Both the position numbers and the translations under genes were made by a program. From positions 62,001 to 126,000 of the IMG/VR virus record IMGVR_UViG_3300036770_008729: 64,000 nucleotides of DNA; one strand, given 5' to 3'. Within the stretch, counting starts at the first letter, position 1, and each line of letters opens with the position of its first letter. This document shows positions 4,270 through 63,006 of this stretch, piece after piece. Under the pieces are notes generated by a model. It was given only the letters and a program-made list of their open reading frames with translations. It had not been told where the DNA came from and did not search any database.

Positions 4270-7200
4270 TCAATTTATTTTGTTAACAATTTTGTTTATA
4301 ACCTTAATATATTCTAAATCTATAATCTTTATTAGGTAAATTCCAGTCTTAGATTCTCCTAAATCTTGTTTTATTTTAGTAATACCTTGACTAACACTTT
4401 GCTTTTTTTGACTTATAAGTTTACCACTAATATCATAAACTTCTATCATAAGCTGTGTTTGATTTTTAGTAATATATTCTACAACAAACTCATTTTGTGT
4501 TGGATTAGGATATACTTTTGCATCCACTTCATCTAATTTAATTTGTGAAGTCTTAACAATCAAACTATCATTATTAGGATTTGCTTGTCTTTGTGTTATA
4601 CAACCAGCTTGTATTACTAAAGTTCTCCAAGTACTAGTTCCACAATTAGTTACTGATCGAACTGATAAAGTTCCTCCATTGAATCCCGATGAGAATGTAA
4701 CATCGATTATTCTACTAATGGAAGAACCAGTAGTTCCATTTGGTAACATCCATTGATAACTTGTTGCGCCATTTACTGCTACAATACTGTAAGTGGATGT
4801 TGCTCCTATGTTACCACATGTTGGTCCTGAGATTGCTCCGGGCACTGGTGGTGTTTTACTTATTGATAATGTTCTTGCTGTACTTCTAACACCACAAGCG
4901 TTTTGTGCTTGAACTTGTATAGTACCTCCAGTAAATTGTGGACTAAACTGTACTAATACATTTCTAGTACCTTGACCTTGAACTATTGTGGCGTTGGATG
5001 GTGCTGTCCAAAAATATGAAGTCGCTCCTGATACTGTACTGCTTGAATACAATACATTACTTGATGTTTGATCTACATTAGTATAAGCAGAACAAACATT
5101 TGTTGTACCTGTAATTCTAGTTGGTGTTGCAGGTGCATTAGTACCCGAACTTGTGACAGTTAAGGTACTTGGTGATCCAGTACCACAACTATTGATTGAT
5201 GCCACTGTTATGTTCCCACTTACAAATGAACTTGTAATAGTGACTTGGATAGTATTAGTACCTTGACCATTGTTTAATGTAATACCATTTGGTACTGTCC
5301 AAGAATAACCAATAGTGGCGTCATACATTGGTGATATTGAGTATGAAGTAGTTGTAGCACAAGTACTTGTTGGACCACTAATCGGACCTGGTATTCCAGG
5401 TAAAGAGTTGATTGTGATAGTAGATGAAGCTGATGATATACAATTGCCTGTTGATGCAGTGTATGTCATTGTACTTGTATTTTTAGCATAAACTGTATTT
5501 CTAATATCACCAGTATAAGATTGTGTTGCTGTTGGATTTATATATAATCCAGTTAATGGTGACCAGGTTACCATTGTTGGAGCATATATACCAAACTTCA
5601 TGTTTGGACGATACTTACTACTTATAAGATTGTTTGCTTCATTAAGTGGTTCACAAACTGAAAAGTCATTATCATAACCTCCATAAACTGAGTTAAATGA
5701 AGTTTGACTAAACTCTACTGCTGAGTTTGTACCAGTACAGTTGCTACAAGAATTGTTTACATCATTGTCGTGACAGATCTCTATTACAATATTGTAAAGT
5801 GGATTCCATGTAAATGATTGATTAAAAGAATATACTTTCCATCCAACTGTAGGTGCTTGTTCTTGTCCAGTAGTGTAAACAGTTACAAAAGGACCTACGG
5901 TAACACTTAAAAGACTACCACTTTCTGTAATATAACCATAAGATAAGTTGTCATTTATGGTGTGAGCTATTTTAATTGTAAAGTTATTTTGGTAACCAGT
6001 ACCTTGTGATAGTACTTTTAATGCTAATGAATTTATATCACCAGCAACTAAACCAAGTGCAAGTAATTCTGATGATCTAATTAGATATTGCACTCTTGAA
6101 CCTTCATAGCTACTTGTATAAGGTGTAATACCTGATTGACCAGTAAGAGTTGTATTGACTCCTAATTGACGACTGAATGTAGCTGATCCTCCTGTTGCTG
6201 TTAATGTTGTAATTGAATTACTACAAGCAGTTGTTATTGAAGGTGTAACTGATAAAGCAGATGGTGTTGGGTTTATTTGTATGTCTACAGATGAAGAAGA
6301 ACTACAACCATCTAAAGTCGATGTTAAAGTATATGTTCCTTCATTATTGTATGTAGCGTTATTAATAGTTGGTGACTGTTGTGATGATGTATAGTTATTT
6401 GGTCCAACCCAACTAAATGTATTACCAATATCAGAACTTCCAATTAAACTTATAGTTGAATTTTGACATACAGAACTATTGTTTGTACTAGCATCTGTTA
6501 AAGGTATAGCTTTTATAGTCACACTAACTGGTATATTTGATGAACCACATTCTGAGGTAATAGTTAGTGAGTAGTTACCAGCATCAGCATTTGTAGTATT
6601 GTCAATTAAGAGTGATGGTGTTTCAGCACTTGGATTGATTGATGGATCAATTACTATACTATTTTTATACCATTGGTATTGCACTTGACTACCAGTTGCT
6701 ACAACTGTTAAATCTATTGGATCATTAAAACAAACAGATGATATTGTTGATGGTTGTGAAACAATTTGTAAAGTAGGTATTCCAGTTATATTAATAACAT
6801 CACTAACACTACAACTTCTGTAAGTTGAAGTTAAAGTATAACTATTTAATCCTACTAAAGCAGATGGTATAGTTGCATTTAAAGTACTTGCTGAAAAACT
6901 AGGACCTGTCCAACTGATTGTTGGTGCTACTGTATTTAAAGTAATGGTAATGCTCCAGTCATTAAATGTACCTATATCACCAGTATAGTCATCAGTAATA
7001 CGAAGTGTCCAAACACCATCAGCACTTCCAGTTAAGTTAGAAAAAGGTTGCTCAGGTGTGTATGTTCCTGTGAATGGAGCTGTACCTGATGTTATAGCGG
7101 TACCTGAAGTAGAGAATACTGTGTTAACATAGTTGTCACCAGTACTTCCATTATCACTTGATAAATCTATTGAAGAACCATTTGGAGCAATTAAAGTTAA

Positions 7201-8763
7201 ATCTAAGTCCGCATCAAATGGATGTGTTATGTTTAGTAATACTGAGGTTATTTGATTAGCATTAGCACCAGTTCCACTAACAGTAATAGTTCTGTCTATA
7301 CTTGAAACATCAGGTATTAATAATGAGGATGTATTTGAACCACTAAATGATGGATTCATATTTGGTGAAACTCCATCTAAGTTGATTTCACTACTCTGAC
7401 AAATACTAAAGTCTGTTCCGGCTTCAGCAGTTGGATAAACATTGTTTATGTTGACAGCTACATCATATACAATATTACCAGGACCAGCTCCATTTGTATT
7501 AGTACTAAATTCAAACTGCGATTCTTTAATAACATCAAACGATAAACTATTACTACCAGTTGTTGTAGGAGCAGTTACTGAAAAAGTATATGTGGTAGTT
7601 GATCCAGCAGCTAAGTTGTTAGCATCTATTTTTTGATAACTTGCTTGGTCATTCCATTTAACACCTATATTATAGTCATCTCCACCTCCATCAATCCAAG
7701 AAACAGTACCAGTATTTTTAACAGTTACAGTTATCTGACGAGTTTCTCCTGCACACCACCAAGAGTTGCCTGTATTAGAACTTATCCAAGTTGCAAGATA
7801 TGGTGTAGGTGGAGGTGTCCAAGTATAAGTTAATCCTGAGGCTGGTTTAACTGTGTTTGATAATCTTACAGTAGCACTATTAGTCCCACCTGCTGTAGTA
7901 CTTGACCAACTAGTTGTAGTTGTACGATTTGCAAAATCAGCATTAGAATTTCCTCTTAATCCAATTTCAAAACCAACTGCTGTAGTGTTTGTAGGTCCAA
8001 GTATGCTGTAGACAAAATCTATCGTATTTGTTGTCTCGTTTAATCTAATTTGAAAATCATACAATTCACCAAAACCACCATTTGTAGTATATCTTTGAAA
8101 TCCAGTCCATTGAACTACTAATGTTTGATTTGGAGCAGTTCCAATTGTTTCATAACGAATACCAAATTTTGGATTTGAAAATCTGAAATGAAAACCAGTA
8201 CCTTTTGAAGTTGCTGCGGATGATATTGTAACTGTGTTTGTTCCTATAGCAGTTACAGTTGCATTGTTTGGTATACCAGATCCTGATACCTTATCACCGA
8301 TAGATATTTGACTAATATCACCACTTGTTATTGTGATTGTAGTACTACCACTTGTTCTATTTGCTAAAAAAGAACCTCTACCAATTAAGTCTCCTCCCAT
8401 AGCAGATATTACGTTGTTGGAGGTTCCCAAAGATAATGGGGACATACTGTTTATTGGTAAAGTACCTAATGAAATCCAACCATTAGTACTGATACCAAAC
8501 TGAGTGTAGATTGTATTGTTATAAACAAAATTAAACCCAATTGGTAGTAACGCTGATGAGACGTTATCGTCTAAAAATCCTGCTGTAGTATTTGGTAATG
8601 TTCCAGTATATACACTGTTTGTCCAATTAGTAAAGTTGTTGTAATTGGTTCCTCCTGTAATTTCAGTATATGTTCCTGATGAGGATGAAAAGGTATAATT
8701 ATTTACTTGTGATAATAAGTTGAATGAAATTAGAGTAAGAAGAAGGGTTAGTAATTTTTTCAT
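4270..8763 (-). CDS. large secreted multidomain protein with T9SS type A C-terminal sorting domain (P-proprotein-like, Ig-like and PKD-like repeats)
   Basis: Signal peptide MKKLLTLLLTLISFNLLSQ (ATG 8763); P-domain (LNITHPFDADLDLTLIAPNG...GVWTLRITDD); PKD-like repeats (YSWTVPNG...GQGTNTI); CTD VYPNPTQ...IEVYDISGKLI...GIYLIKI. Confidence 0.85.
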   Translation of the reverse strand: MKKLLTLLLTLISFNLLSQVNNYTFSSSSGTYTEITGGTNYNNFTNWTNSVYTGTLPNTTAGFLDDNVSSALLPIGFNFVYNNTIYTQFGISTNGWISLGTLPINSMSPLSLGTSNNVISAMGGDLIGRGSFLANRTSGSTTITITSGDISQISIGDKVSGSGIPNNATVTAIGTNTVTISSAATSKGTGFHFRFSNPKFGIRYETIGTAPNQTLVVQWTGFQRYTTNGGFGELYDFQIRLNETTNTIDFVYSILGPTNTTAVGFEIGLRGNSNADFANRTTTTSWSSTTAGGTNSATVRLSNTVKPASGLTYTWTPPPTPYLATWISSNTGNSWWCAGETRQITVTVKNTGTVSWIDGGGDDYNIGVKWNDQASYQKIDANNLAAGSTTTYTFSVTAPTTTGSNSLSFDVIKESQFEFSTNTNGAGPGNIVYDVAVNINNVYPTAEAGTDFSICQSSEINLDGVSPNMNPSFSGSNTSSLLIPDVSSIDRTITVSGTGANANQITSVLLNITHPFDADLDLTLIAPNGSSIDLSSDNGSTGDNYVNTVFSTSGTAITSGTAPFTGTYTPEQPFSNLTGSADGVWTLRITDDYTGDIGTFNDWSITITLNTVAPTISWTGPSFSASTLNATIPSALVGLNSYTLTSTYRSCSVSDVINITGIPTLQIVSQPSTISSVCFNDPIDLTVVATGSQVQYQWYKNSIVIDPSINPSAETPSLLIDNTTNADAGNYSLTITSECGSSNIPVSVTIKAIPLTDASTNNSSVCQNSTISLIGSSDIGNTFSWVGPNNYTSSQQSPTINNATYNNEGTYTLTSTLDGCSSSSSVDIQINPTPSALSVTPSITTACSNSITTLTATGGSATFSRQLGVNTTLTGQSGITPYTSSYEGSRVQYLIRSSELLALGLVAGDINSLALKVLSQGTGYQNNFTIKIAHTINDNLSYGYITESGSLLSVTVGPFVTVYTTGQEQAPTVGWKVYSFNQSFTWNPLYNIVIEICHDNDVNNSCSNCTGTNSAVEFSQTSFNSVYGGYDNDFSVCEPLNEANNLISSKYRPNMKFGIYAPTMVTWSPLTGLYINPTATQSYTGDIRNTVYAKNTSTMTYTASTGNCISSASSTITINSLPGIPGPISGPTSTCATTTSYSISPMYDATIGYSWTVPNGITLNNGQGTNTIQVTITSSFVSGNITVASINSCGTGSPSTLTVTSSGTNAPATPTRITGTTNVCSAYTNVDQTSSNVLYSSSTVSGATSYFWTAPSNATIVQGQGTRNVLVQFSPQFTGGTIQVQAQNACGVRSTARTLSISKTPPVPGAISGPTCGNIGATSTYSIVAVNGATSYQWMLPNGTTGSSISRIIDVTFSSGFNGGTLSVRSVTNCGTSTWRTLVIQAGCITQRQANPNNDSLIVKTSQIKLDEVDAKVYPNPTQNEFVVEYITKNQTQLMIEVYDISGKLISQKKQSVSQGITKIKQDLGESKTGIYLIKIIDLEYIKVINKIVNKIN

Positions 8764-33734: not shown

Positions 33735-33937
33735 TAGTTATTTGTACAGATGTGGACAATGTAGGTTCTGATATGAAATTATCACTTACAATAGGGAAAT
33801 CATATAAGGTCATTAGAGAAAATAATATAGGATTTTATTTAGAAGATGACCGTGGTTCTATTCAATGGTATTCTAAATGGAGGTTCAGTAGGTCAGAGTG
33901 GAGAGATAATCAAATAGATAAAATATTATTTACTTAG
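33731..33937 (+). CDS. small SH3-like protein with RDNQIDKIL tail
   Basis: VICT...LTIGKSY...DDRG...YSKWRF. Confidence 0.7.
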   Translation: MIVICTDVDNVGSDMKLSLTIGKSYKVIRENNIGFYLEDDRGSIQWYSKWRFSRSEWRDNQIDKILFT

Positions 33938-41763: not shown

Positions 41764-43611
41764 CTACTTTAACAACTCAGTCTTTCTTAAATCAGAGTTT
41801 TTACCAAACCAAACATCTAAACTTACATTTGATACATCATCTTTAGTTATAGATGTCATTCTTGGATTATTAATAATGTCTTGATACTCATCATCCACTA
41901 AAGCTGCTAAACCTTTTTTATACTTAATATCAAATTGTTTTAAGTCGTTTTTTTCAACAAACTGATTATATTCTGATTGTGTATAGAAAATAAGTTTCTT
42001 TTTACCTTTTTGTTTTGGTATAGCAACCACAATAGGTGTTTCTACTTTGTAAATCATTTTTCTATCAAACATTTCTGGCCAATACTTATAGAAAAAGTTA
42101 ATAAGAAGACCTGCTATCGAATTACCATCAACATCAGCATCTACATAAAATAGAACTCTACCATATCTTAAATCCCTTAAGTCAACCGTTTGTCCTAATT
42201 TAAGACCAATTGCAGCCATCAAATTAACCACTTCCTCATTTTGAACCAGCTTCTGATTAGTCATTTCTGATACATTAACAAACTTACCTTTAAGTGCAAA
42301 GGCACCCATAGTTTCTGGAGTTCTATACTTTCTAAATGCGGAAATAGCAGAATCACCCTCAAATAAACCAATAGAACATTTCCAGCGGTCTTTACCTTTG
42401 GCATCAATCAGTTTCTCAACTTTGATTTTACTTAATTTCTTATTAAGGTCTCTTTGTAGTTTAGATTCTTCTGCATTTTTCTTTTGTTGAATCCAATCTA
42501 AAATAGAATTAACGATTTCTGATTTAATAATTTGTGCAACAAATTTAGATGTTACCTCAAAAGTAGAACCAAAATCTTTTACTTCTGTAATCAACTTCTC
42601 TTTAGTTTGTGATGAGAATGATGGATTTATTATAGTAGAGTTTAAGAAAAGAAACATATGATTTTTTAGTTCAGATGGTTTAACATCTACTTTGTGTTTC
42701 TTTAGGAAAAACTCTTTTAACTGACTAATAATTTGATTCATTATGTAATCCACGTGGGTTCCACCATCATAAGTTTCAGTAGAGTTAGCAAAACTTACTT
42801 GTTGAAATCCAGATTCTGATAAGGCAACACCGATAGACCAGGTCTTATCTTTTTTAACATCATAGAAAAACTCTTCGTGATAAAGTTTGATATAGTCCTC
42901 AAATGATTTTATATTTATGAACTTATCATTAAAATAAAATTTGATGTTGGGGTTACATCCTGCTAAGTCCCAAACTCGCTTTTCAATTACTTTAAAGTGA
43001 TCGTTATCAATCTTTTCAATTCCAAATTGAGTTAAGTCTGGTTTCCATTTTATTTCAGTAAAGTTTTTAGTACCAGGTTTTACTTTTGCTTTATCTCTGT
43101 CTCTCATATTATTATAGAATCTTTGAGAGAAGTGATTTTTACCATCACAGGTGGTTACAATAAATTCAGTTGAAAAGATGTTTGTCAATTTAGCACCCAG
43201 TCCATTTAGACCGGCTACTGTTCTTTCATCGGTGTCATCATAGTTGGATCCAGACATAAGGTTGCCAAAAATAACCTCAGGAACATATTGATTATGTTCT
43301 TTGTGTATTTGAACGATAATACCACCGTTATCTTTAACAGATAAAGTATTATTCTCTATATCAACGTGAACATCTATTCTATTTAAGCTTTTATTTCTTT
43401 GATGTTCATCAACTGCGTTTGTAATAACTTCATCAAAGATTTTGATGAATGAGGGGATGTAAGTTACGGACTTAAGTTCCATTTTACTTTCATCGTTTAT
43501 TAAGTATTTTTGAGAAGTGTTGGGTTTATTAGAGCCTACATAAGTTCCAGGTCTAAGAAGAACGTGACTAATTTGGTCTAATACTTTATATTTATCTTCA
43601 ATTTTTTTCAT
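41764..43611 (-). CDS. type II DNA topoisomerase ATPase/TOPRIM subunit (T4 gp39+gp60-like)
   Basis: HVLLRPGTYVGS, FDEVITNAVD, GLNGLGAK, LFEGDSA, DADVDG, YKKGL. Confidence 0.95.
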   Translation of the reverse strand: MKKIEDKYKVLDQISHVLLRPGTYVGSNKPNTSQKYLINDESKMELKSVTYIPSFIKIFDEVITNAVDEHQRNKSLNRIDVHVDIENNTLSVKDNGGIIVQIHKEHNQYVPEVIFGNLMSGSNYDDTDERTVAGLNGLGAKLTNIFSTEFIVTTCDGKNHFSQRFYNNMRDRDKAKVKPGTKNFTEIKWKPDLTQFGIEKIDNDHFKVIEKRVWDLAGCNPNIKFYFNDKFINIKSFEDYIKLYHEEFFYDVKKDKTWSIGVALSESGFQQVSFANSTETYDGGTHVDYIMNQIISQLKEFFLKKHKVDVKPSELKNHMFLFLNSTIINPSFSSQTKEKLITEVKDFGSTFEVTSKFVAQIIKSEIVNSILDWIQQKKNAEESKLQRDLNKKLSKIKVEKLIDAKGKDRWKCSIGLFEGDSAISAFRKYRTPETMGAFALKGKFVNVSEMTNQKLVQNEEVVNLMAAIGLKLGQTVDLRDLRYGRVLFYVDADVDGNSIAGLLINFFYKYWPEMFDRKMIYKVETPIVVAIPKQKGKKKLIFYTQSEYNQFVEKNDLKQFDIKYKKGLAALVDDEYQDIINNPRMTSITKDDVSNVSLDVWFGKNSDLRKTELLK

Positions 43612-43701: not shown

Positions 43702-43709
43702 AATATATA
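43702..43709 (+). promoter_or_regulatory. AATATATA motif 4 nt before ATG 43714
   Basis: Heads the CTS-like gene cluster. Confidence 0.5.
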
Positions 43710-51166: not shown

Positions 51167-51305
51167 AATTCCCATAAGCCTCATCCAATAGTTCTTGTTG
51201 TTCTTTGTTGTTCTTTGTTGTATTGTACAACATCGGTCATCATTAAATGAAAACAGTTGTACTTTTGCTAATATATAAACAAAATTTAAATATATTAATA
51301 TACCT

Positions 51306-52655
51306 ATGACTATGATGACTGAAAAATCTATTTCTGAGTTTCTCAGTAATGAATATAAGGATTTCGCCATGTATGTGGTCGAAGGACGTGCAATACCATC
51401 AAGTATTGACGGGTTCAAACCCACACAAAGAAAAATTATTCATGTTGCCAATCAAATCTGGAAAACCGGAAATGAAAAAACACTTAAAGTGTTTCAATTA
51501 AGTGGTAAGGTCGCCTCTGATTGTTTCTACCATCACGGCGATATGTCCTTATCAAATGCCATAATAAATATGGCTCAAAAGTTTAAGAACAACGCTCCCC
51601 TTTTAGAAGAAGAAGGTCAGTTTGGTTCTCTTAGGTCTCCACAACCTGGAGCTCCTCGTTATATCGGAACCAAACTAAATGATAACTTCCGTCTAATATA
51701 CAAAGACTTTGAGCTACTTCAATATAAAGAAGAAGAAGGAGAACAAATTGAACCTAAATATTTCTTACCTATTGTTCCTACCGTTTTATTAAACGGATCA
51801 TCTGGAATTGCAGTTGGATTTGCCTCAAACATCTTAAATAGAGATATAAAAAGTATTATTGATGCTTCTGTTAGAGTTCTTATGGGTAAAGAGCCAGGTG
51901 AAGTAAAACCACATTTAAATGGATTTTTAGGTGAGTTTATACAAGATACAGAAAATAATAAAAGATGGATTATTAGAGGTAAGTGTGAAAGAGTTAATAC
52001 TTCTACCGTGAGAATAACTGAACTTCCACCATCAACAACTTATGAAAAGTATGAAGAGGTTTTGGATAAATTGGTGGATGATAAAGTAATTGTTTCTTAT
52101 GATGATAACTGTAAGGATAATATAGATTATACAATCAAATTCACAAGAGTAGATTTAGAAAAGTTCGATGATGAGAAGTTGTTAAGAGTATTGAAGTTAG
52201 AGGAATCATCAACTGAGATTTACTCAACACTGGATGAGTTTGGTAAATTAAAAATATTTGATAATACAACAGACATTATTAAATACTTTGTTAATTTCAG
52301 ATTAACTTATTATCATAAGAGAAAGTCATTCTTATTAGAAAGAATGAATAAAGAATTAAAACTTCTTTCCAATCGAGGTAGATTTATTAAAGCGATTTTA
52401 GATGAGAAGCTAAAAGTTAATAATGTTGTAAAGTCAGAAATCGTAGCACAGATTGAATCTTTGAGTTTAGATAAGATAGATGATTCTTATGATTACTTAT
52501 TGAAAATGCCTATTTACTCTTTAACAAAAGAAGTATTTGAGAAGTTAAAAGAAGATTTCAAATTGAAAAAGGAAGAGATTACAAAGCTGGAAGCAACTGA
52601 TCCTAAGGATATGTATTTAGGAGATTTGGCGGAATTGAAAAAGAAGTATAAATAG
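51306..52655 (+). CDS. type II DNA topoisomerase breakage-reunion subunit (T4 gp52-like)
   Basis: RAIPSSIDGFKPTQRK, YHHGD, APRY (catalytic Tyr), LLNGSSGIAVGF, ITELP. Confidence 0.95.
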   Translation: MTMMTEKSISEFLSNEYKDFAMYVVEGRAIPSSIDGFKPTQRKIIHVANQIWKTGNEKTLKVFQLSGKVASDCFYHHGDMSLSNAIINMAQKFKNNAPLLEEEGQFGSLRSPQPGAPRYIGTKLNDNFRLIYKDFELLQYKEEEGEQIEPKYFLPIVPTVLLNGSSGIAVGFASNILNRDIKSIIDASVRVLMGKEPGEVKPHLNGFLGEFIQDTENNKRWIIRGKCERVNTSTVRITELPPSTTYEKYEEVLDKLVDDKVIVSYDDNCKDNIDYTIKFTRVDLEKFDDEKLLRVLKLEESSTEIYSTLDEFGKLKIFDNTTDIIKYFVNFRLTYYHKRKSFLLERMNKELKLLSNRGRFIKAILDEKLKVNNVVKSEIVAQIESLSLDKIDDSYDYLLKMPIYSLTKEVFEKLKEDFKLKKEEITKLEATDPKDMYLGDLAELKKKYK

Positions 52656-55003: not shown

Positions 55004-55363
55004 ATGAACTGCAAATTAATTTTTACCATAATTTTTCTAATCACTTCGATTGTTGTTAAGTCGCAAACATTCAATATCACTGATAGAAATGGTTATACCG
55101 ATGAAGTTATTGTCAAATACCAATCAGCTTTGAATGGTGCTGATTTAGAAAATTTCAGAGGAAAAACAATCACAAAAACATTCGAGTTTACAAACGGAAT
55201 AAAGTTCACTCTAATTTCTGCAAAAGAACTTTTCATTTCCGGAAAATCAATCGACTTAAATCTTTACAAAGATGAAAGACCAGAAAGTTACAGAGAGCCT
55301 GTTTTCTTTCTGACCGATACTGGTTACTTATTGGCTCAATATAAAAAATTAGAAAAACAATGA
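55004..55363 (+). CDS. secreted protein with signal peptide, coupled to T9SS cargo gene
   Basis: MNCKLIFTIIFLITSIVVKSQ; ATGA overlap with next gene. Confidence 0.7.
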   Translation: MNCKLIFTIIFLITSIVVKSQTFNITDRNGYTDEVIVKYQSALNGADLENFRGKTITKTFEFTNGIKFTLISAKELFISGKSIDLNLYKDERPESYREPVFFLTDTGYLLAQYKKLEKQ

Positions 55364-58300
55364 AAAAATTAACTCTATTTTTAATTGCGACCTTATTTAG
55401 TTTCATTGCAATTTCACAACCAGCAAATAATAATTGTGGAACTGCTCAAAACTTAGGAACATTACCAACTCCAGCGGCTTGTCCCAATGGTGTAGGTGCG
55501 AATGTCAATGTTACTGGAACAACTGTAAATGCTACTTATCCACTACCTTATAATTACTTATTAGGTTGTCAAACTGGTGGAAATCAACCAGCACCATCTC
55601 CTGATGTTTGGTATCAATTTGTGGCATCTGGAAATCAAGTCAATATAAATATAACACCTGGTTCTAGTCCATTTTTAGCTAATCCATCTATCACTCTTTG
55701 GTCTGGTAGTTGTGGTTCATTGAATGGATTCAACTGTGATAATAATGGATCTAACAATGGTAATAACTCTGCTACATTTGAACCATTAACACCAGGTCAA
55801 ACTTATTACATACAAATATCAGGTTCTTCTGCAACATCAACTGGTAACTTTAATATGACAGTAAACGCTAGTAATGATTGCAATAATTGTCTTCAAAATG
55901 TAAGTTTGGTTGCTACACCTAATCCAGTCAATGGATTTTATCAACCTGGTCAAACTATAAACTTTTGTTTAACAATAACTGGATATAATCAAGTAAGTTC
56001 AAATTGGCTTCATGGGGTAATACCAACTTTTGGTAATGGTTGGAATCTAGCTACACTTACAACAACACCGGCCAATTCTTGTTCAACTGCTGGAAATTGG
56101 CAATGGGCAAACTCTAACACATCAACTGCAACAAATCTCATCACAGGTCCCGGATTCTACTATTTCTCAGGATCTGGAGGTTCTGGTAATAACTTTGGAG
56201 ATAATGGATCGACTTGTACAAGAACTTTTTGTTGGTCTATTCAAACAAAATCAGGTTGCACATCAGGAAATAACTTAAATATATCAGTAAATACAACCGC
56301 TGATGGTGAAACTGGTTCTTGGACAAGTCCTGCTTGTCAGGGTGATCCAAATATAAACTTTGCTGCTCAATTGAATTGTTGTCAAACTACGGCTACATCA
56401 ACTTCTCTAACTTGTTTCGGTGGAACAAATGCTACGGCTACTGCAAATCCAACAGGTGTATCACCATTTAACTACTCTTGGAATACAACACCAGTTCAAA
56501 CAACTCAAACCGCTACTGGTCTTTCTGCTGGAAGTTATACAGTAACAGTAACTGATAACGGTGGTTGTGTTTCATCAGCCTCTGTTACAATCACTCAACC
56601 AACACAACTTCAAGTTACAACCACTTCAACAAATGCTAGTTGTGGTCAATTAAATGGATCTGCAACTGCTACTGCTTCAGGTGGAACTGGACCTTACTCC
56701 TACTCTTGGAATACAACTCCTGTTCAAACAACTGGAACCGCAACTGGACTTGGACCTGGAACTTATACAGTAACCGCAACATCTGCTGGTAACTGTCAAT
56801 CAACGGGTACGGTTACTATTTCATCAACTGGTTCAATAACTGCAACCTCGACATCAACTAATGTTACTTGTAATGGTGCAAATAATGGAACAGCTACTGC
56901 TAATCCAAATGGTTCTACTAATTATACTTATTTGTGGAATACAATACCTCCACAAAATACTCAAACCGCCACAGGTTTAGCTCCTGGTAGTTATACTTGC
57001 ACAGTGACAAGTTTTGGATGTCAGACAACTACAACAGTAACTATCACACAACCTCCAGTTTTAACTGCAGCAATAACAACATCAAATGTAATTTGTAATG
57101 GTGGAAATACTGGTTCGGCAGTTGTTACACCAAATGGTGGAACACCAGGATATACTTATCTTTGGACAACCTCACCAAATCAAATAACTGCTACTGCTAC
57201 AAATCTTACATCAGGAACTTACTCTGTAAATGTAACTGATTTGAATGGTTGTACTGTTATAGCATCAGCGAACATTACCCAACCTCAACAATTAAATATA
57301 ACTTTGGTATCATCACAGAATCCAGGATGTAGTGGTTCTTCAACTGGTCAAATTGTGGTTTCTGCATCAGGTGGTGTTGGACCTACTTACTTTTACACTT
57401 TGAATGGTGGAACTCCACAAACATCAGGAACTTTTACTGGATTATCAGGTGGAACTTATACTATTTCTGTAAGTGATGCAAATAACTGCACACAACAAAT
57501 ACAGGTTTCTTTGACTCAACCTTTTCCTATTTCTTCTTCTTATACAGTAACAAATGTTAATTGTAATAGTGGAAATAACGGACAAATACAATTAACGACT
57601 ATTGGAGGAACACCTCCATATACTTATCTTTGGTCTAATTCTTCTCAATCTCCAAATCTCACATCACTTACAGCGGGAACTTATTCAGTTGTTATTACGG
57701 ATGCTTCGGGTTGTCAATTTAATTTGACTAATATAGTAGTTACTCAACCAAATGCTATTAATATACTTTTAACTCCGAATCCATCTTCGATTTGTATTGG
57801 ACAATCTTCAAGTATCACTGCACTTATTGTTGGTGGGACTTTACCATACAACTTTGTATGGTCTAATGGTCAATTAACACAAAATATAACTGTTACACCT
57901 ACTACAACAACTGGTTATACTTTACAAGTATCAGATGCAAATGGTTGTGGACTTAGTGCTAATACGATTATTAATGTTAATCCACCACTCACTGTTTTAA
58001 CAACTTCCTCACAAGGAACTATTTGTGTTGGTCAATCATCGACATTAACTGCTAGTGTGACCGGAGGTAATGGTGGACCATATACTTATAACTGGAATCC
58101 AACAGCTCAATCTGGTCAGTCAATAATAGTAACACCGGGAACTACCACACTTTACACAGTGACAGTAGGTGATGGTTGTTCTACACCAGTAACTAGCACA
58201 GTAACAGTAAATGTTAATTTACTTCCGGTTGTTCAATATACAACAACTGCACTTTCAGGATGTGAGCCTTTAACTGTTACTTTTACCAATAATACACCAA

Positions 58301-58977
58301 ATGTAAATTGTGTTTGGTTTATAAATGGTAATCAAGTAACAAACTGCACCACATCTCAATCTTTTAATACATCTGGAAGTTATTCAGTAACTCTTTCAGT
58401 GACCAATACAAATGGTTGTTCTAACACATCACCAAATATATTGGTGAATGTTTATCCAAAGGCGGTTTCTAACTTTTCAGCTAACCCAATTGTAACAGAT
58501 TTATTAAACCCAAATGTTAGTTTTACCAACTTCTCTACCTCAGGAAATTATCAGTGGTCTTTTGGAGATGGAAACATTTCTTCACTTATAAACCCACAGA
58601 ATACCTATTCTGATACTGGAAGTTATAATGTTCAGTTAATTGTTGTTTCACCTGATGGGTGTAGGGACACTTCTTCACTTGAGATATACATAAGTGATTT
58701 ATTTACATTTTATATTCCTAATGCTTTTACACCGAATGGTGATGGTAAAAATGATGTATTCACACCTCAGATAAGTGGTGCAGAGTGGTATCAATTCTGG
58801 ATTTACAACAGATGGGGAGAGCAAATTTGGGACTCTGGAACTAATGGTGAACCTTGGAATGGAATCTATAAAGGTAGTTTAGTTCAACAAGATGTTTATG
58901 TTTGGAAGTTGATTGTAAAGGAAAAACAACGAGGCAAAAAGCATTTATTTACAGGACATGTTAGTGTTATTAAATAA
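55360..58977 (+). CDS. SprB-repeat/PKD adhesin-like protein with T9SS type B (gliding motility-associated) C-terminal domain
   Basis: Signal peptide; repeated YSWNT...ATGL..G.YTVTVTD..GC units; PKD (WSFGDG); CTD YIPNAFTPNGDGKNDVF...IYNRWGE...WNG...DVYVWK. Confidence 0.9.
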   Translation: MKKLTLFLIATLFSFIAISQPANNNCGTAQNLGTLPTPAACPNGVGANVNVTGTTVNATYPLPYNYLLGCQTGGNQPAPSPDVWYQFVASGNQVNINITPGSSPFLANPSITLWSGSCGSLNGFNCDNNGSNNGNNSATFEPLTPGQTYYIQISGSSATSTGNFNMTVNASNDCNNCLQNVSLVATPNPVNGFYQPGQTINFCLTITGYNQVSSNWLHGVIPTFGNGWNLATLTTTPANSCSTAGNWQWANSNTSTATNLITGPGFYYFSGSGGSGNNFGDNGSTCTRTFCWSIQTKSGCTSGNNLNISVNTTADGETGSWTSPACQGDPNINFAAQLNCCQTTATSTSLTCFGGTNATATANPTGVSPFNYSWNTTPVQTTQTATGLSAGSYTVTVTDNGGCVSSASVTITQPTQLQVTTTSTNASCGQLNGSATATASGGTGPYSYSWNTTPVQTTGTATGLGPGTYTVTATSAGNCQSTGTVTISSTGSITATSTSTNVTCNGANNGTATANPNGSTNYTYLWNTIPPQNTQTATGLAPGSYTCTVTSFGCQTTTTVTITQPPVLTAAITTSNVICNGGNTGSAVVTPNGGTPGYTYLWTTSPNQITATATNLTSGTYSVNVTDLNGCTVIASANITQPQQLNITLVSSQNPGCSGSSTGQIVVSASGGVGPTYFYTLNGGTPQTSGTFTGLSGGTYTISVSDANNCTQQIQVSLTQPFPISSSYTVTNVNCNSGNNGQIQLTTIGGTPPYTYLWSNSSQSPNLTSLTAGTYSVVITDASGCQFNLTNIVVTQPNAINILLTPNPSSICIGQSSSITALIVGGTLPYNFVWSNGQLTQNITVTPTTTTGYTLQVSDANGCGLSANTIINVNPPLTVLTTSSQGTICVGQSSTLTASVTGGNGGPYTYNWNPTAQSGQSIIVTPGTTTLYTVTVGDGCSTPVTSTVTVNVNLLPVVQYTTTALSGCEPLTVTFTNNTPNVNCVWFINGNQVTNCTTSQSFNTSGSYSVTLSVTNTNGCSNTSPNILVNVYPKAVSNFSANPIVTDLLNPNVSFTNFSTSGNYQWSFGDGNISSLINPQNTYSDTGSYNVQLIVVSPDGCRDTSSLEIYISDLFTFYIPNAFTPNGDGKNDVFTPQISGAEWYQFWIYNRWGEQIWDSGTNGEPWNGIYKGSLVQQDVYVWKLIVKEKQRGKKHLFTGHVSVIK

Positions 58978-59009: not shown

Positions 59010-59037
59010 ATTGCAATTTTTTTACTATATTTGTATT

Positions 59038-59430
59038 ATGAGAAAAGAAAGCATTATAGAAATGATTGATAAAAGAATTATTGAAAACTTTGTCAATGGT
59101 TATAGTCCAGAGTTTATTATAGCTGACATACAATCAAAAACAGATAAAATGTCTGACTTTATTACAAATCAAGGAATTGATTTAGAAAAATTTATTGATA
59201 TGGATTTTGATGTTTTAACTGATGATGATTTCTCAAAAGATAAATTACCAATGACTAGAACTAAATATACAGTTTACTATGTTAAACAATCTAGAAAAAG
59301 AATAAAAGATATAAACTGGATTATTGAGAATTGTAAAAGATTTCCACATTTATCAAAATCACAAGTATTTAGGTTGATTAAACTTAGAGAAAAGTTGAGT
59401 CGTGAGAACGCTATTGAATTACCCTTTTAA
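59038..59430 (+). CDS. hypothetical protein
   Basis: Start reassigned to ATG 59038, 4 nt after TATATTTG (59026-59033). Confidence 0.65.
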   Translation: MRKESIIEMIDKRIIENFVNGYSPEFIIADIQSKTDKMSDFITNQGIDLEKFIDMDFDVLTDDDFSKDKLPMTRTKYTVYYVKQSRKRIKDINWIIENCKRFPHLSKSQVFRLIKLREKLSRENAIELPF

Positions 59431-60162
59431 GTTTCTTATCCATTCAGAGAACTTTATTAAGCTTTCATTAAGTGTCTCAACAAAATTAAAATCTTTTAAG
59501 AAGTCACCAAAGTCTTCAACATAACCTTTTTTACTTTCATCTGTTTTGGTTTGAGTCCATTGCCAGTTAAAACTTAATTGAGTTGGTGTTTTAAACCCGA
59601 AGAATTTTAACACTTCTTTTTCTAATTCAACTGCTTCACTTCCATTCCAGTTATGACCAGTTGCTACAATTCCAACTTCTTTATCCTTTAATAAGTTAGA
59701 TTCTCCTAATGTAGTGTGTCTATTCTCAAGCCAAGTTAATCTTTCAATTAATTGTGTGTAGATAGCATTCATTTTACCCCATCTTATAGATCCAAAAAAG
59801 ATAACTATATCTGCCTCAAAGATTGCATTTGCAACTTTATACATTTCATCTGATTTATTATTGAGTGAAGCCCAACATCTAATTATTTTATGTGGATTCT
59901 TTTCTTTATCCTTTAGAAGTGCGTCTTTTAGACCACAAGTATTTCCTCTTTTAGTTGATACATTACCTTCACATGGAAAGATTTTAAGTTTAGACACATT
60001 AATAATCTCTATACCTTCAATCTTTTTAGCAATTTCATCTGCTATTATAGAAGATTTAGGAAGTTCTTTATCACCAGACCATCTATTAGAAGTAGTAAGA
60101 AAAACAATCTTTTTCTTTTGATTTTTCTTAAGATAGTTGTAAAGTCTTTTCAATTTATCCAT
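59419..60162 (-). CDS. flavodoxin-like / NAD(P)H-dependent FMN reductase family protein
   Basis: LTTSNR, IFPCEG, CWAS, ADIVIFFGSIRWG, VATGHNW; start reassigned to 60162. Confidence 0.75.
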   Translation of the reverse strand: MDKLKRLYNYLKKNQKKKIVFLTTSNRWSGDKELPKSSIIADEIAKKIEGIEIINVSKLKIFPCEGNVSTKRGNTCGLKDALLKDKEKNPHKIIRCWASLNNKSDEMYKVANAIFEADIVIFFGSIRWGKMNAIYTQLIERLTWLENRHTTLGESNLLKDKEVGIVATGHNWNGSEAVELEKEVLKFFGFKTPTQLSFNWQWTQTKTDESKKGYVEDFGDFLKDFNFVETLNESLIKFSEWIRNLKG

Positions 60163-60207
60163 ATTGTATATATAAAAAAAAGAATATACAATCTTAATAT
60201 ATACAAT

Positions 60208-60540: not shown

Positions 60541-60601
60541 AACTTTTGAAATTATCAAACATATATATTTTATCATATCTGCATAAATTATATATAGGTT
60601 C

Positions 60602-62020
60602 ATGAAGAATATTTTTTTAACTTTAATATTTTCTCTGATATCAAATCTTTGCTTATCACAAGCTTATTCTACCTGTGCATTAGCCTCTGCGGGTATAGCT
60701 ATATCAAGTGGTGGGTGTATTAATAATCAAACCTTCACAGGGAGTGTAAATATGGCCGGTCTTTGTGTAGGCGGTAATAATCCAGCAATTCACATTAAGT
60801 TTGTAGCTGGTTCTTGTTCACAATTTACAATTACACCAACTGCCAATATCGCTAACATAGGAACTCAAATTCTAACTACTGCGTGTAGTGGTGTTGTTGG
60901 TACAACTGCTTGTCACGAAAATGTTATTGCTGGTGTTCCATTTATGGCAGATGCACATGATAATAGTGGTAATTATTTATTGACACCAGGTACAACTTAT
61001 GTTTTGAGAATATGGGGTGCTGTAGGTACCTCAACATTTAATATTTGTTATAATTCTGGAGTAACAGAGAATCCATCAAACGAATGTTCTGGTGCGTTTG
61101 GTTTAGGAACACTTCCTACGCAGTTTTATAATGGTGGTGATTGCTCATTTACTGGATCTGGAACTGATGCTACAACTTCGGATCCAGCTGCTTCTGGTTT
61201 GTGTGCTGGTTCATTGGAAAATACTCAATGGATTAAATTTCAACCATTGGCTGGTGTTTCTACATTTCAAATTATTGGTAGTTCTATCAATTGTACTGGT
61301 GGTGGATGTGGATTTCAATTTGGTATATTTTCAGGAAGTTGTGGATCTTTAATCTCTGAGGGTTGTTATGGGAATAAAGTTTGCTCTGGTGGACAGTCTG
61401 TATCAGGTCCTACTAACGTTAGTGCTACTGATGGATTTTCAATAGCTTGGTCTGGTACTTCTACAACTGGATTTACAGCAACTATTACAAAAACCGGTGG
61501 TGGTAATTTTATCGGTACAGAGGTTTTTTACTTAGTTATGGATGGCAATGCTGATGCTGATTGTCAATATACTTTACAAGGAACAAATTTACAGGCTTTA
61601 CCAATTGAATTAATCTCTTTTGAAGGTCATTTCAATGGTGAGTTAAACGTTTTACAGTGGTCATGTGCAACTGAAATAAATAATGATTATTTTAGTTTAG
61701 AAAGGTCGGATGATGGAGTAAGTTGGGGAAGTATTGTAAATATATCAGGTGTAGGTAATTCCAACTTAATAACAAATTACTCTTATTATGATAATACTTT
61801 TTTACCTGAAAGGTTTAATTACTATAGATTAAAACAAGTTGACTTCGATGGTAGTTTCAAGTACTTTGATATTATTGCAATAAACAATATGAATATAAAT
61901 AAGCCTAAACTACTAAGAGTTTATAATATCTTAGGGAATAAAGTAGACAAAGAATCAACTGGACTATTGATATATGAATACTCAGATGGTAGTTTCAAAA
62001 AGACATTCGTTAAAGATTAA
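60602..62020 (+). CDS. Cys/Gly-rich secreted protein with Bacteroidota T9SS-type C-terminal region
   Basis: Signal peptide; LPIELISF...WSCATEINNDYFSLERS...YYRLKQVDFDG; short CTD VYNILG...YEYSDGSFKK. Confidence 0.8.
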   Translation: MKNIFLTLIFSLISNLCLSQAYSTCALASAGIAISSGGCINNQTFTGSVNMAGLCVGGNNPAIHIKFVAGSCSQFTITPTANIANIGTQILTTACSGVVGTTACHENVIAGVPFMADAHDNSGNYLLTPGTTYVLRIWGAVGTSTFNICYNSGVTENPSNECSGAFGLGTLPTQFYNGGDCSFTGSGTDATTSDPAASGLCAGSLENTQWIKFQPLAGVSTFQIIGSSINCTGGGCGFQFGIFSGSCGSLISEGCYGNKVCSGGQSVSGPTNVSATDGFSIAWSGTSTTGFTATITKTGGGNFIGTEVFYLVMDGNADADCQYTLQGTNLQALPIELISFEGHFNGELNVLQWSCATEINNDYFSLERSDDGVSWGSIVNISGVGNSNLITNYSYYDNTFLPERFNYYRLKQVDFDGSFKYFDIIAINNMNINKPKLLRVYNILGNKVDKESTGLLIYEYSDGSFKKTFVKD

Positions 62021-62904
62021 TCCTCTATACAAGAAGGTGGCTTTATATTTCTTTTGAATTTCCAATGCATATTCTCCCAATCTTGTATTTCTTTATTAAG
62101 ATTTTTAATTTCCTCAGCAAATAAATTTAATTCCTCTTTTTGAGTATTAAAATCTCTTACTTTATCATTAATTTCATCTTCCTGTTGAGTAAGTTTATCT
62201 TCTTTTCTTTTAAGTTCTTTTGATAAATTTTCTAATTCTTTTTCTTTATCTGAAACTAATTTTAAGTCAGTATCAATTTTAGATTGTAGTTCTGCATACT
62301 TAGAATCTAAATCTTTTGATGATTCTAAAAGACTTCTATCAAAGTTTCTTTCTTTTTCTTTTAAGTCTTGTAATTTATCTTCTAAGTCTAGTTGTTTTTC
62401 AGTAAGATCTCTTGATCGAGTTCTTAATTCATCCTCTTTTTTATCTAATGATTTTAACTCTTCTTTATGCTCAGACTCTCTTTTTTCAACTCTTTTAAGT
62501 CTGATGTCAATCTCCTCTTCTTTGTCTTTGATTCTTCTTTCTCTATTGTTTAAGTCTGTTTCTTTCCATTCTATCTCTTTAACCTTAGATTCGTCCATAG
62601 TTGGACCACTATTTTGTGGAATGGATGAAAGAATCATATCCTCAATGAATGGTATTAATTTCTTACCTAATTGAGCAGGTTGTGGCATTTTTTCAGACCT
62701 CATAAAAGATAACAACTCAGCTTTCCAGTCAATGATTTCAAAAATCTGAGGATTCATCTCAATAACTTCTTTATCAAGTGGAATAGTGTCTCCTTTTAAT
62801 TTATATTTGAATTCTTCAATTATTGTTCCAGATTTTATTAAAAATATCTTTTTATCAGGACTTACATATTGATAATCTGATAAAAGCTTGTGTTTAATCT
62901 TCAT
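62017..62904 (-). CDS. long coiled-coil protein
   Basis: About 170 aa of E/K/L heptads; TATAAATA upstream. Confidence 0.75.
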   Translation of the reverse strand: MKIKHKLLSDYQYVSPDKKIFLIKSGTIIEEFKYKLKGDTIPLDKEVIEMNPQIFEIIDWKAELLSFMRSEKMPQPAQLGKKLIPFIEDMILSSIPQNSGPTMDESKVKEIEWKETDLNNRERRIKDKEEEIDIRLKRVEKRESEHKEELKSLDKKEDELRTRSRDLTEKQLDLEDKLQDLKEKERNFDRSLLESSKDLDSKYAELQSKIDTDLKLVSDKEKELENLSKELKRKEDKLTQQEDEINDKVRDFNTQKEELNLFAEEIKNLNKEIQDWENMHWKFKRNIKPPSCIED

Positions 62905-63006
62905 GTTAGTAGATAAATTTTATTTATATATAAAAAACCTTCTTTTTTGTTTATTATATTGAATTATTTACTTTCTAGATTAATATATAAAATAAATTTC
63001 ATAAAA

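What the first reader, a model, noticed from the sequence alone, without database searches (positions are those of the whole stretch)
60602..62020. Third T9SS-type secreted protein, Cys/Gly-rich
Seen: signal peptide, two Cys-rich beta modules, the Bacteroidota LPIELxxF...YYRLKQVDFDG domain and a short CTD. With the genes at 4270 and 55360, that makes three host-secretion cargos in 64 kb, each with an ATATATA-like element upstream. Inference: a deliberate late programme of host-surface remodelling.
Basis: partly seen in the sequence, partly recalled or inferred. Interest (0 to 1): 0.6.

Follow-up and report, generated by a model that had tools for sequence, protein, structure and literature searches.

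The report
Megaphage exported protein with mini T9SS tail
A roughly 600 kb phage of Flavobacteria-like hosts carries a host-derived, exported binding protein that ends in a 40-residue cut-down version of the type IX secretion tag, so the phage probably sends it to the host cell surface, but that tag fails the standard tests and its function is unproven.

Summary
It has a signal peptide with the Bacteroidota Q-rule cleavage site, two disulfide-rich beta-sandwich modules (PPC / collagen-binding-domain fold), an Fn3 domain holding LPIEL...YYRLKQVDFDG, and a 40-residue tail.

The tail is not a canonical T9SS C-terminal domain (CTD). Pfam and NCBIfam give no match. It has three strands instead of seven, and the first ~28 and an inner ~18 residues of a type A CTD are missing. 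It keeps the D- and E-like motifs, sits exactly where type A CTDs sit in paralogues, is conserved in 88 proteins, and is predicted to dock on a Fluviicola PorV (ipSAE 0.74, best control 0.00).

The gene belongs to an unnamed Crocinitomicaceae/Fluviicola family. The phage copies form one syntenic, compositionally adapted clade inside it. The window is part of a 598 kb megaphage contig related to LR745206 and LR756502, which also carry 4-6 canonical T9SS-tailed genes each.

The ATATATA element is real but genome-wide (about a third of genes, including topoisomerase II), so it marks neither these cargos nor a late class. Timing and surface remodelling remain untested.

The parts
60561..60567 (+). 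Distal ATATATA copy, 34 nt before the ATG. On the minus strand it reads AATATATA at 60562-60569.
   Evidence: It belongs to a genome-wide directional motif.
60590..60596 (+). Proximal ATATATA copy (context ttATATATAgg), 5 nt before the ATG.
   Evidence: The distance falls in the 0-9 nt class of the bimodal distribution.
60602..62020 (+). Whole gene, 472 aa plus stop codon (P0001).
   Evidence: The identical protein is on a 598,435 bp JGI contig and on a 16.9 kb Logan contig.
60602..60658 (+). Signal peptide, residues 1-19, with predicted signal peptidase I cleavage at S19|Q20 (Bacteroidota Q-rule).
   Evidence: Q20 is invariant in 57/57 relatives and position -1 is S/G/A in 56/57. No signal-peptide predictor was available, so this rests on inspection and conservation.
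60659..61066 (+). Cys-rich module 1 (residues ~20-155), a PPC / collagen-binding-domain-like beta sandwich.
   Evidence: VIA-align to ColH CBD 3jqw_A: Z 9.9, rmsd 2.8 over 107 residues, model range 19-153. pLDDT above 90. Conserved Cys at 25, 39, 55, 72, 95, 104 and 149.
61067..61591 (+). Cys-rich module 2 (residues ~156-330), a second PPC / GBD_T9SS_assoc-like sandwich with invariant CAGxLEN..W and DGN motifs.
   Evidence: The tandem ColG s3a-s3b structure 5iku_A aligns over model residues 22-329 with Z 9.7. The nearest Atlas feature clusters are PF23759/PF04151, score 0.94. Invariant columns are listed.
61598..61897 (+). Fn3-fold domain (residues 333-432) holding LPIELISF and YYRLKQVDFDG. 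In host genomes this domain is a common spacer placed just before a CTD.
   Evidence: Z 10-11.7, rmsd 2.1-2.6 against many Fn3 structures. There are 27 copies per Fluviicola genome, and at least 14 of 27 in G001 abut a PF18962 CTD.
61898..62017 (+). C-terminal tail (residues 433-472), three beta strands: a candidate mini-CTD with a D-like motif (YNILGNKV) and an E-like motif (GLLIYEYSDGSFKK).
   Evidence: Alignments. hhalign against full type A CTDs gives E 6.5e-4, probability 28%. All confident predicted PorV contacts lie in residues 441-472. No HMM match.
55360..58977 (+). Neighbouring canonical T9SS cargo: SprB repeats, PKD domains and a type B CTD.
   Evidence: PF13573 9e-42, PF13585 3e-13, TIGR04131 1e-11. 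Signal peptide ends ...AIS|QPA.
4270..8763 (-). Canonical T9SS cargo: PKD_6, a P_proprotein domain, Ig domains and a type A CTD. AATATATA lies at 8783-8790 (minus strand).
   Evidence: PF18962 1.9e-10, TIGR04183 3.9e-10. Signal peptide ends ...LLS|QVN. Motif coordinates.

Best explanation
The gene encodes an exported, non-enzymatic binding protein that an ancestor of this megaphage clade acquired from a Crocinitomicaceae/Fluviicola-type host and has kept since.

Proposed pathway, with each step marked:
1. During infection the host Sec system exports the protein, and signal peptidase I cuts before Gln20. This is inferred from the sequence and its conservation.
2. The two disulfide-rich PPC/GBD-like sandwiches and the Fn3 domain fold in the periplasm. 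The fold is predicted with high confidence.
3. The last 40 residues act as a cut-down type A T9SS signal. They keep only the motif D and motif E strands, the parts reported to contact PorM and PorV and reported to suffice for secretion of GFP in Porphyromonas. This step is inferred, with in-silico support.
4. The host T9SS then hands the protein to PorV and releases it or fixes it on the cell surface. There the N-terminal modules bind an unknown ligand. This step is speculative.

The gene is one of at least four T9SS-addressed proteins in this phage. Its upstream ATATATA elements are copies of the phage's general promoter-like motif and not a cargo-specific signal.
For: Architecture:
- AF2 model with pLDDT 89.3 and pTM 0.71.
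- Domain folds and Atlas features.

Export:
- Invariant Q20 after a small residue, and 15 conserved Cys.

Tail:
- In-family relatives of about 505 aa carry a full PF18962 CTD at the same position. P0001 aligns only to its last strands.
- Profile-profile alignment is in register, E 6.5e-4.
- Gly445 and Lys467 are near-invariant across short tails.
- Some phage-clade tails read PGIYLRK...K, close to canonical motif E.
- The same Fn3 plus short-tail module ends proteins with unrelated N-termini, 4-5 per Fluviicola genome.
- At least 14 of 27 Fn3 copies in G001 abut a canonical CTD.
- PorV docking gives ipSAE 0.74/0.75/0.74 against a best control of 0.00. Runs share at least 88% of contacts, partner pLDDT is at least 81, and the interface uses residues 441-472 only. 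The mark was reached by 51 of 78 solved complexes and 2 of 108 mismatched pairs.
- Literature: the last 22 residues (D+E) of HBP35 suffice for GFP secretion, and motif E lysines are required (PMC10202324).

Phage residence:
- Window genes match phage-only PHROGs and split T4-type topoisomerase II, with 70-73% nt identity to megaphages.
- A 19-member clade with SH-aLRT 95 holds all phage-context copies.
- Synteny with the topoisomerase II pair.
- GC3 of 0.13-0.17 matches the phage genome.
Against: - No T9SS model (PF18962, TIGR04183, TIGR04131, NF033708) matches the tail, even at E<=1.
- The tail has 3 strands, not the 7-strand Ig fold. It lacks motifs A-C, including the PNP motif.
- hhalign probability is only 28%.
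- The PorV pass may reflect the model's memory of solved PorV-CTD complexes. It used a PorV from a candidate, not proven, host.
- In F. johnsoniae about 100-residue type A CTD regions are the ones described as secretion signals (PMC12618676). The 22-residue result comes from one Porphyromonas protein.
- No expression data are available.
- The ligand and the benefit to the phage are unknown.
Confidence: 0.55

Rival explanations
1. The tail is a decayed remnant of a type A CTD that no longer works as a secretion signal. The protein is Sec-exported but stays in the periplasm, or reaches the outer membrane by another route, and acts there.
For: It fails all CTD HMMs. It lacks 4 of 7 strands and motifs A-C. 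Studies in F. johnsoniae describe about 100-residue type A CTD regions as the secretion signal.
Against: A remnant should drift. Instead the tail is conserved in 88 proteins, with near-invariant Gly and Lys. It recurs on unrelated N-terminal domains, is kept in a 19-member phage clade, and is predicted to dock on PorV through exactly those residues.
Confidence: 0.22
2. The Fn3 plus short tail is a separate sorting or anchoring module with its own partner. That partner could be another outer-membrane shuttle or a surface-layer component. Its resemblance to CTD motifs D and E would then be superficial.
For: The module is restricted to Crocinitomicaceae-like genomes and absent from a Vicingaceae chromosome that has 12 Fn3 copies. 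Similarity to CTDs is weak. T9SS has several CTD classes with dedicated shuttles.
Against: The module occupies the same position as type A CTDs in orthologues and paralogues. Some tails have a canonical GIYL.K motif E. The PorV prediction passes with zero-scoring controls.
Confidence: 0.15
3. The region is host DNA: a binning or assembly chimera, or the host flank of a provirus. It would then not be a phage gene.
For: IMG/VR flags the 281 kb record as 'provirus'. The family is bacterial in origin, with chromosomal relatives at 41-49% identity.
Against: Phage genes lie on both sides of the gene. The identical context occurs on two independent contigs. Four of four checked members of the closest clade sit in phage-like contexts, one of them syntenic with the topoisomerase II pair. 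GC3 is adapted to the phage. The gene carries the phage's own upstream motif.
Confidence: 0.03
4. The protein is a virion component, such as a decoration or adhesion protein built from Ig-like and Fn3 domains, and not a protein exported into the host envelope.
For: Fn3/Ig-like and carbohydrate-binding-like modules are common on phage capsids and fibres (general knowledge). The protein has no enzymatic domain.
Against: It has a cleavable signal peptide with an invariant Q-rule site and 15 conserved cysteines, which point to folding outside the cytoplasm. Its orthologues are ordinary chromosomal genes of bacteria.
Confidence: 0.05

Closest known systems
Type A T9SS cargo proteins (PF18962 / TIGR04183 CTD), such as P. 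gingivalis RgpB and HBP35, F. johnsoniae RemA and AmyB, and the window's own gene at 4270-8763
   Same: Sec signal peptide with the Q-rule site. Passenger domains followed by an Ig/Fn3-type spacer. A C-terminal beta-strand signal ending in a Gly...Lys motif E preceded by a motif D-like 'v.N..G..V' strand. Found only in T9SS-bearing Bacteroidota and their phages. Predicted contact with PorV.
   Different: The tail is about 40 residues and 3 strands, not 70-100 residues and 7 strands. Motifs A-C are absent. It scores below every curated threshold.
The 22-residue minimal signal of the HBP35 CTD (as summarised in PMC10202324)
   Same: A D+E-only segment is reported to be enough to drive secretion of GFP. 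The natural tail here retains just that part.
   Different: The HBP35 result comes from an engineered truncation in Porphyromonas. Here the short form is a naturally conserved module in Crocinitomicaceae-like bacteria and megaphages, and it is untested.
GBD_T9SS_assoc (PF23759) and PPC (PF04151) domains; collagen-binding domains of clostridial collagenases ColG and ColH
   Same: Same beta-sandwich fold, also in tandem (Z 9.7-9.9). These are the nearest language-model clusters. The domain is typically attached to T9SS cargo.
   Different: No HMM match, even at E<=1. The disulfide-rich pattern of 15 conserved Cys and the invariant CAGxLEN..W and DGN motifs are specific to this family. No ligand is known.
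Envelope-directed proteins of huge phages (sortase B substrates, outer membrane proteins, PspA; bioRxiv 10.64898/2026.10.24.761521)
   Same: Huge phages encode signal-peptide proteins with host-type sorting signals that could place phage-encoded proteins on the bacterial surface.
   Different: That survey covers Gram-positive sortase signals and beta-barrel OMPs and does not mention type IX secretion. Here the route would be the Bacteroidota T9SS.

Membership tests
T9SS type A C-terminal sorting domain (PF18962 / TIGR04183) | Scores above the curated cut-off of the family HMM | tested here: not met
   No match for the whole protein at E<=0.1 or for residues 325-472 at E<=1. The same scans detect the CTDs of the two neighbouring genes.
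T9SS type A C-terminal sorting domain (PF18962 / TIGR04183) | A 70-100 residue, seven-strand Ig-like beta sandwich with motifs A, B, D and E | tested here: not met
   The tail is about 40 residues with three strands. Alignment to full CTDs shows the first ~28 and an inner ~18 residues are missing, including the PNP motif.
T9SS type A C-terminal sorting domain (PF18962 / TIGR04183) | Motif D and motif E (conserved Gly and C-terminal Lys) at the extreme C-terminus | tested here: inconclusive
   hhalign is in register with E 6.5e-4 but probability of only 28%. Gly445 and Lys467 are at least 90% conserved. Some clade members read GIYLRK...K.
T9SS type A C-terminal sorting domain (PF18962 / TIGR04183) | N-terminal Sec signal peptide | tested here: met
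   Typical n-, h- and c-regions with an invariant Q at +1 (57/57) after S/G/A. No dedicated predictor was available.
T9SS type A C-terminal sorting domain (PF18962 / TIGR04183) | Recognition by the shuttle PorV | tested here: inconclusive
   In silico only. ipSAE is 0.74 against a best control of 0.00, runs share at least 88% of contacts, partner pLDDT is at least 81, and the interface uses tail residues 441-472. The mark was reached by 51 of 78 solved complexes and 2 of 108 mismatched pairs. The pass may reflect memory of solved PorV-CTD complexes.
T9SS type A C-terminal sorting domain (PF18962 / TIGR04183) | T9SS-dependent secretion and removal of the CTD by PorU | not testable with these tools
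   This needs secretion assays in wild-type and T9SS-mutant strains plus mass spectrometry.
T9SS type B CTD (PF13585 / TIGR04131) | Scores above the curated cut-off of the family HMM | tested here: not met
   No match. The only PF13585 match in the 281 kb record is the 55360 gene.
PPC / GBD_T9SS_assoc binding domains (PF04151, PF23759) | HMM match, and a beta-sandwich fold of the collagen-binding-domain type | tested here: inconclusive
   HMM criterion not met at E<=1. Fold criterion met: 3jqw_A with Z 9.9 and 5iku_A with Z 9.7. Atlas feature neighbours are PF23759/PF04151 clusters, score 0.94.
Fibronectin type III domain | Seven-strand Fn3 sandwich | tested here: met
   Residues 334-432 match many Fn3 structures at Z 10-11.7, rmsd 2.1-2.6 over 83-100 residues. 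The Pfam fn3 HMM itself does not match.
Host-derived accessory gene of a phage lineage (moron-like) | Bacterial homologues in the presumed host lineage, phage copies forming a nested clade, and adaptation to the phage genome | tested here: met
   Crocinitomicaceae/Fluviicola relatives at 41-49% identity in chromosomal contexts. Phage clade with SH-aLRT 95. Synteny. GC3 adapted to the phage. The phage motif lies upstream.

The most novel reading that the evidence does not exclude
The 40-residue tail is a natural minimal type IX secretion signal, a D+E-only 'mini-CTD' placed behind an Fn3 spacer. It would define an unrecognised CTD class used by Crocinitomicaceae-like bacteria. Freshwater and subsurface megaphages would have adopted it, together with canonical type A and orphan type B cargos, to place their own binding proteins on the infected cell's surface.
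Probability: 0.4. Interest if true: 0.7.

Novelty: new variant of a known kind. Interest (0 to 1): 0.55.

Why it matters
There are two reasons.

First, T9SS researchers have an open question about which parts of the type A CTD are really needed. One engineered 22-residue fragment suffices in Porphyromonas, which casts doubt on motifs A-C. A naturally conserved family of about 40-residue D+E-only tails, sitting exactly where full CTDs sit in paralogues, would be a ready-made test of that question. It would also mean that current HMM-based counts of T9SS cargo miss a class.

Second, it extends the emerging picture that huge phages encode proteins for the host envelope to the Bacteroidota-specific T9SS. 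This phage and two 630+ kb relatives each carry several T9SS-addressed genes, including SprB-like adhesins. In Flavobacteria, T9SS and gliding surface proteins are linked to phage sensitivity (my own knowledge, not checked here), so such cargo could alter adsorption, superinfection or attachment of infected cells.

The cargo content also points to a Crocinitomicaceae/Fluviicola-type host for a megaphage group that has no assigned host.

Tried and rejected
- **Pfam and NCBIfam** on the whole protein, and Pfam on its two halves at E<=1, found nothing useful.
- **Foldseek on the whole multi-domain model** gave only generic beta-sandwich chains at TM about 0.15. The domain-resolving VIA search was used instead.
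- **IMG/VR viral-contig scan** with the family profile found no other relative.
- **Literature search for the YYRLKQ motif** gave only irrelevant hits. A search for phage-encoded T9SS cargo found none described, although the library is incomplete.
- **Expression:** no RNA run holds the locus, so read laying was not used, and timing ('late') and the transcription start could not be addressed.
- **PorP/SprF (PF11751)** was not found in this record or in LR745206/LR756502. The tool's control genomes were also silent, so this negative is weak.
- **Sigma-70 and terminator scans** around the gene were at chance level, with no terminator.
- **tRNAs:** none in the window.
- **Tree:** the careful search did not finish in 300 s, so the quick IQ-TREE tree with SH-aLRT support was used. 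The context of the long-CTD sister group (P0046) stayed ambiguous.
- **Not run:** the large representative-protein search, because the word search already gave about 100 full-length relatives and the operators asked to spare it.
- **Other limits:** Only genetic code 11 was used.
- **Rejected readings:** a lipoprotein (Cys17 is not conserved and has no lipobox), and an enzyme (no catalytic domain by sequence or fold).
Full report
**1. What is there**

The window holds an uninterrupted ORF at 60602..62020 on the + strand, 472 aa.
- **Signal peptide.** Residues 1-19 are a typical signal peptide ending ...CLS, followed by Gln20. In an alignment of 57 full-length relatives, Gln20 is invariant (57/57) and the preceding residue is S, G or A in 56/57. 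This is the Bacteroidota 'Q-rule' signal peptidase I site, which I name from my own knowledge of that literature. The two neighbouring cargo genes have the same site...AIS|QPA and ...LLS|QVN.
- **Cysteines.** Fifteen cysteines are at least 80% conserved, as expected for a protein that folds outside the cytoplasm.
- **Model.** An AlphaFold2 model built on the 57-sequence alignment is confident: mean pLDDT 89.3, pTM 0.71, and no segment below 50.

**2. Domains**

A search of about 48,000 representative solved chains resolves the parts.
- **Residues 334-432**, which hold LPIELISF and YYRLKQVDFDG, are an Fn3 sandwich (Z 10-11.7, rmsd 2.1-2.6 over 83-100 residues).
- **Residues 19-153** match the collagen-binding domain of ColH (3jqw_A: Z 9.9, rmsd 2.8, 107 residues).
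- **Residues 22-329** match the tandem ColG s3a-s3b pair (5iku_A: Z 9.7).

The two 'Cys/Gly-rich modules' are therefore tandem PPC-fold binding domains. A language-model search independently places residues 21-330 beside GBD_T9SS_assoc (PF23759) and PPC (PF04151) clusters, with score 0.94 and 176 shared features. Pfam and NCBIfam give no significant match to any part of the protein, even at E<=1. No catalytic domain is seen by sequence or by fold.

**3. The tail**

The last 40 residues or so (433-472) form three strands outside the Fn3 domain. They are not a canonical T9SS C-terminal domain. The models that readily detect the type A CTD of the 4270 gene and the type B CTD of the 55360 gene find nothing here.

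The family itself shows where the tail came from. Relatives of about 505 aa (P0025, P0026, P0038, P0046, P0047, P0088, P0092, P0107, P0109) carry a full PF18962 domain after the same Fn3 domain. P0001 and 87 other listed proteins have only the short tail.

A profile of 46 short tails aligns in register with a profile of 12 full CTDs. 'vv..NlmGqeV' lies on the CTD strand 'I.I.D..Gk.I', and 'GivI..YsDGT..K' lies on the terminal 'GiY.i.I...K'. The first ~28 and an inner ~18 residues are missing. The statistics are modest: E 6.5e-4 and probability 28%. Gly445 and Lys467 are at least 90% conserved. Some phage-clade tails read 'PGIYLRKC..K.EKI.K', which is close to canonical motif E.

A review states three relevant points (PMC10202324):
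- Type A CTDs have motifs A-E on a seven-strand Ig fold.
- The motif E lysines in the last 13 residues are required for secretion.
- The last 22 residues of HBP35 (motifs D+E) suffice to secrete GFP, and D and E govern the contacts with PorM and PorV.

The tail here keeps just that part.

**4. Position and modularity**

A profile of the Fn3 plus tail finds 27 Fn3 copies in each of two Fluviicola genomes and 12 in a Vicingaceae chromosome. In Fluviicola genome G001, comparison with the PF18962 hits gives this breakdown:
- At least 14 of the 27 copies are followed within 40 nt, in the same ORF, by a canonical type A CTD.
- Four carry the short tail.

The short tail therefore sits exactly where a type A CTD normally sits. 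The Fn3 plus short-tail module also ends proteins whose N-terminal parts are unrelated to P0001, for example a GBD_T9SS_assoc protein, on ORFs of 339 to 1,069 aa. That is the behaviour of a sorting module and not of a decaying remnant.

**5. In-silico binding test**

I paired PorV of Fluviicola G001 (L037:1423-2682, residues 20-419) with P0001 residues 329-472.
- The score was ipSAE 0.74, 0.75 and 0.74 in three runs, against a best control of 0.00.
- Runs shared at least 88% of contacts, and partner pLDDT was at least 81.
- In the tool's calibration the mark was reached by 51 of 78 solved complexes and 2 of 108 mismatched pairs.
- All confident contacts on P0001 are in residues 441-449, 452-455, 457, 459 and 465-472. 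These are the D-like and E-like stretches. None is in the Fn3 domain.

PorV-CTD complexes have been solved, so the pass may be partly memory. It shows that the tail looks like a PorV-binding CTD end, not that it binds. The PorV also comes from a candidate host, not a proven one.

**6. Whose gene is it**

The window is phage.
- It holds both T4-type topoisomerase II subunit genes, an RNA ligase, a tRNA nucleotidyltransferase and several large families known only from phages, with E-values down to 1e-222.
- Its topoisomerase gene is 70-73% identical at the nucleotide level to the 634 and 642 kb megaphages LR745206 and LR756502.
- The window is positions 62001-126000 of a 281 kb IMG/VR record flagged 'provirus'. 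The identical gene and neighbourhood lie at the same coordinates on a 598,435 bp JGI contig. I infer that the record is the first part of a roughly 600 kb megaphage genome and not an integrated prophage.

The protein family has about 100 full-length members, none of them named. The contexts split as follows.
- **Bacterial, chromosomal.** P0030 (49% identity) lies with EF-P and HisRS. P0076 (42%) lies with PBP2 and RodA, near a PorP/SprF gene. P0029 (49%) lies with LpxC, LpxD and MurB. GTDB genomes with relatives at 41-46% identity are Crocinitomicaceae, Fluviicola and other Flavobacteriales.
- **Phage-like.** P0006 (67%), P0011 (62%) and P0022 (54%) lie among dense small ORFs. P0022 sits just downstream of the same split topoisomerase II pair as in the window.

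In a quick maximum-likelihood tree, the phage-context proteins placed on it (P0001, P0006, P0011) fall in one 19-row clade with SH-aLRT 95, nested among bacterial rows; P0022, whose phage context was established afterwards, lies in the same clade. Phage copies have GC3 of 0.13-0.17, matching their 29-30% GC genomes. Bacterial copies track their own genomes. The gene is therefore host-derived in origin but long established in a megaphage lineage. The host is probably a Crocinitomicaceae/Fluviicola-type bacterium; that is an inference.

**7. The 'three cargos' and related phages**

The genes at 4270-8763 (-) and 55360-58977 (+) are bona fide T9SS cargo. The 281 kb record holds one more type A gene outside the window, a 2,328 aa ORF. 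LR745206 has 1-2 type A and 4 type B tails, and LR756502 has 1 and 3. Each also has one Fn3 plus short-tail ORF. Carrying T9SS-addressed genes is thus a trait of this phage group.

I found no paper describing it. A 2026 preprint on envelope proteins of huge phages covers sortase B substrates, PspA and OMPs, but not T9SS.

**8. The ATATATA element**

It is real but general.
- ATATATA lies within 60 nt upstream of 105 of 328 crude gene calls, where 7.2 are expected.
- The extended consensus is about TTAATATATA(C/A).
- In intergenic DNA, AATATATA points at a gene start 91 times and at a gene end 9 times. The total of 100 compares with 24 +/- 5 in shuffled intergenic sequence.
- It precedes both topoisomerase II genes, the tRNA nucleotidyltransferase gene and most first genes of co-directional blocks.

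It therefore neither singles out the cargos nor defines a late class. The target has two copies, at 60561-60567 and 60590-60596. The 4270 gene has one at 8783-8790. The 55360 gene has none of its own and is probably co-transcribed with ORF 55004. No RNA data exist for the locus.

**9. Verdict**

- **Well supported:** the anatomy, Sec export, the bacterial origin of the family and the gene's residence in the phage.
- **More likely than not, but unproven (about 0.55):** routing through the T9SS by a mini-CTD. The tail fails formal membership of the type A CTD family, so I describe it as working like one and do not file it as one.
- **Open:** the ligand, the timing and the benefit to the phage.

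Noticed in passing
Whole 281 kb record G000. In the window, e.g. 8783-8790 (-), 43702-43709 (+), 51270-51277 (+), 60196-60203 (+), 62982-62989 (+): There is a directional promoter-like motif, about TTAATATATA(C/A), upstream of roughly a third of all genes. In intergenic DNA, 91 copies point at gene starts and 9 point at gene ends. Its distance to the ATG is bimodal (0-9 and 15-30 nt). The 0-9 nt class would imply leaderless or very short-leader mRNAs, which is unexplained.
   Followed up: partly
window 55360-58977 (+) and 59011-59430 (+): The SprB-repeat, type B CTD cargo has no PorP/SprF shuttle gene beside it. None was found in this record or in LR745206/LR756502, although the tool's controls were silent too. 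Type B cargo normally needs a cognate shuttle, so this one would have to borrow a host shuttle.
   Followed up: partly
G000:C1 about 7.2-14.2 kb (outside the window): A fourth T9SS-addressed gene in the same phage: a 2,328 aa open frame ending in a PF18962 type A CTD (E 4.7e-12).
   Followed up: no
window 41764-43611 (-) and 51306-52655 (+); also the P0022 contig: The split T4-type topoisomerase II subunit genes flank a variable region. The target gene lies downstream of them in two distantly related phages, so this is a conserved landmark. The P0022 contig also has a LAGLIDADG homing endonuclease there.
   Followed up: partly
IMG/VR record G000 versus JGI contig Ga0310126_0000009 (598,435 bp): The 'provirus' record of 281 kb (CheckV 94% complete) has the same coordinates as the first part of a 598 kb contig. 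The provirus call and the completeness estimate are probably artefacts of host-like genes in a megaphage.
   Followed up: partly
LR745206 42667-43029 (-) and LR756502 552703-553119 (-): Both megaphages encode small ORFs (147 and 237 aa open frames) that consist of little more than the Fn3 plus short-tail module.
   Followed up: no
window 59419-60162 (-), 33934-35094 (-), 18772-20040 (+): Accessory genes near the target: a weak FMN-reductase-like protein, a tRNA nucleotidyltransferase and an RNA ligase. No tRNA genes are present in the 64 kb window.
   Followed up: no
window 62017-62904 (-): A convergent gene overlaps the target's stop codon by 4 nt. It encodes a 295 aa, Glu/Lys-rich, coiled-coil-looking protein with no family match on record. 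No terminator-like hairpin lies between the two genes.
   Followed up: no
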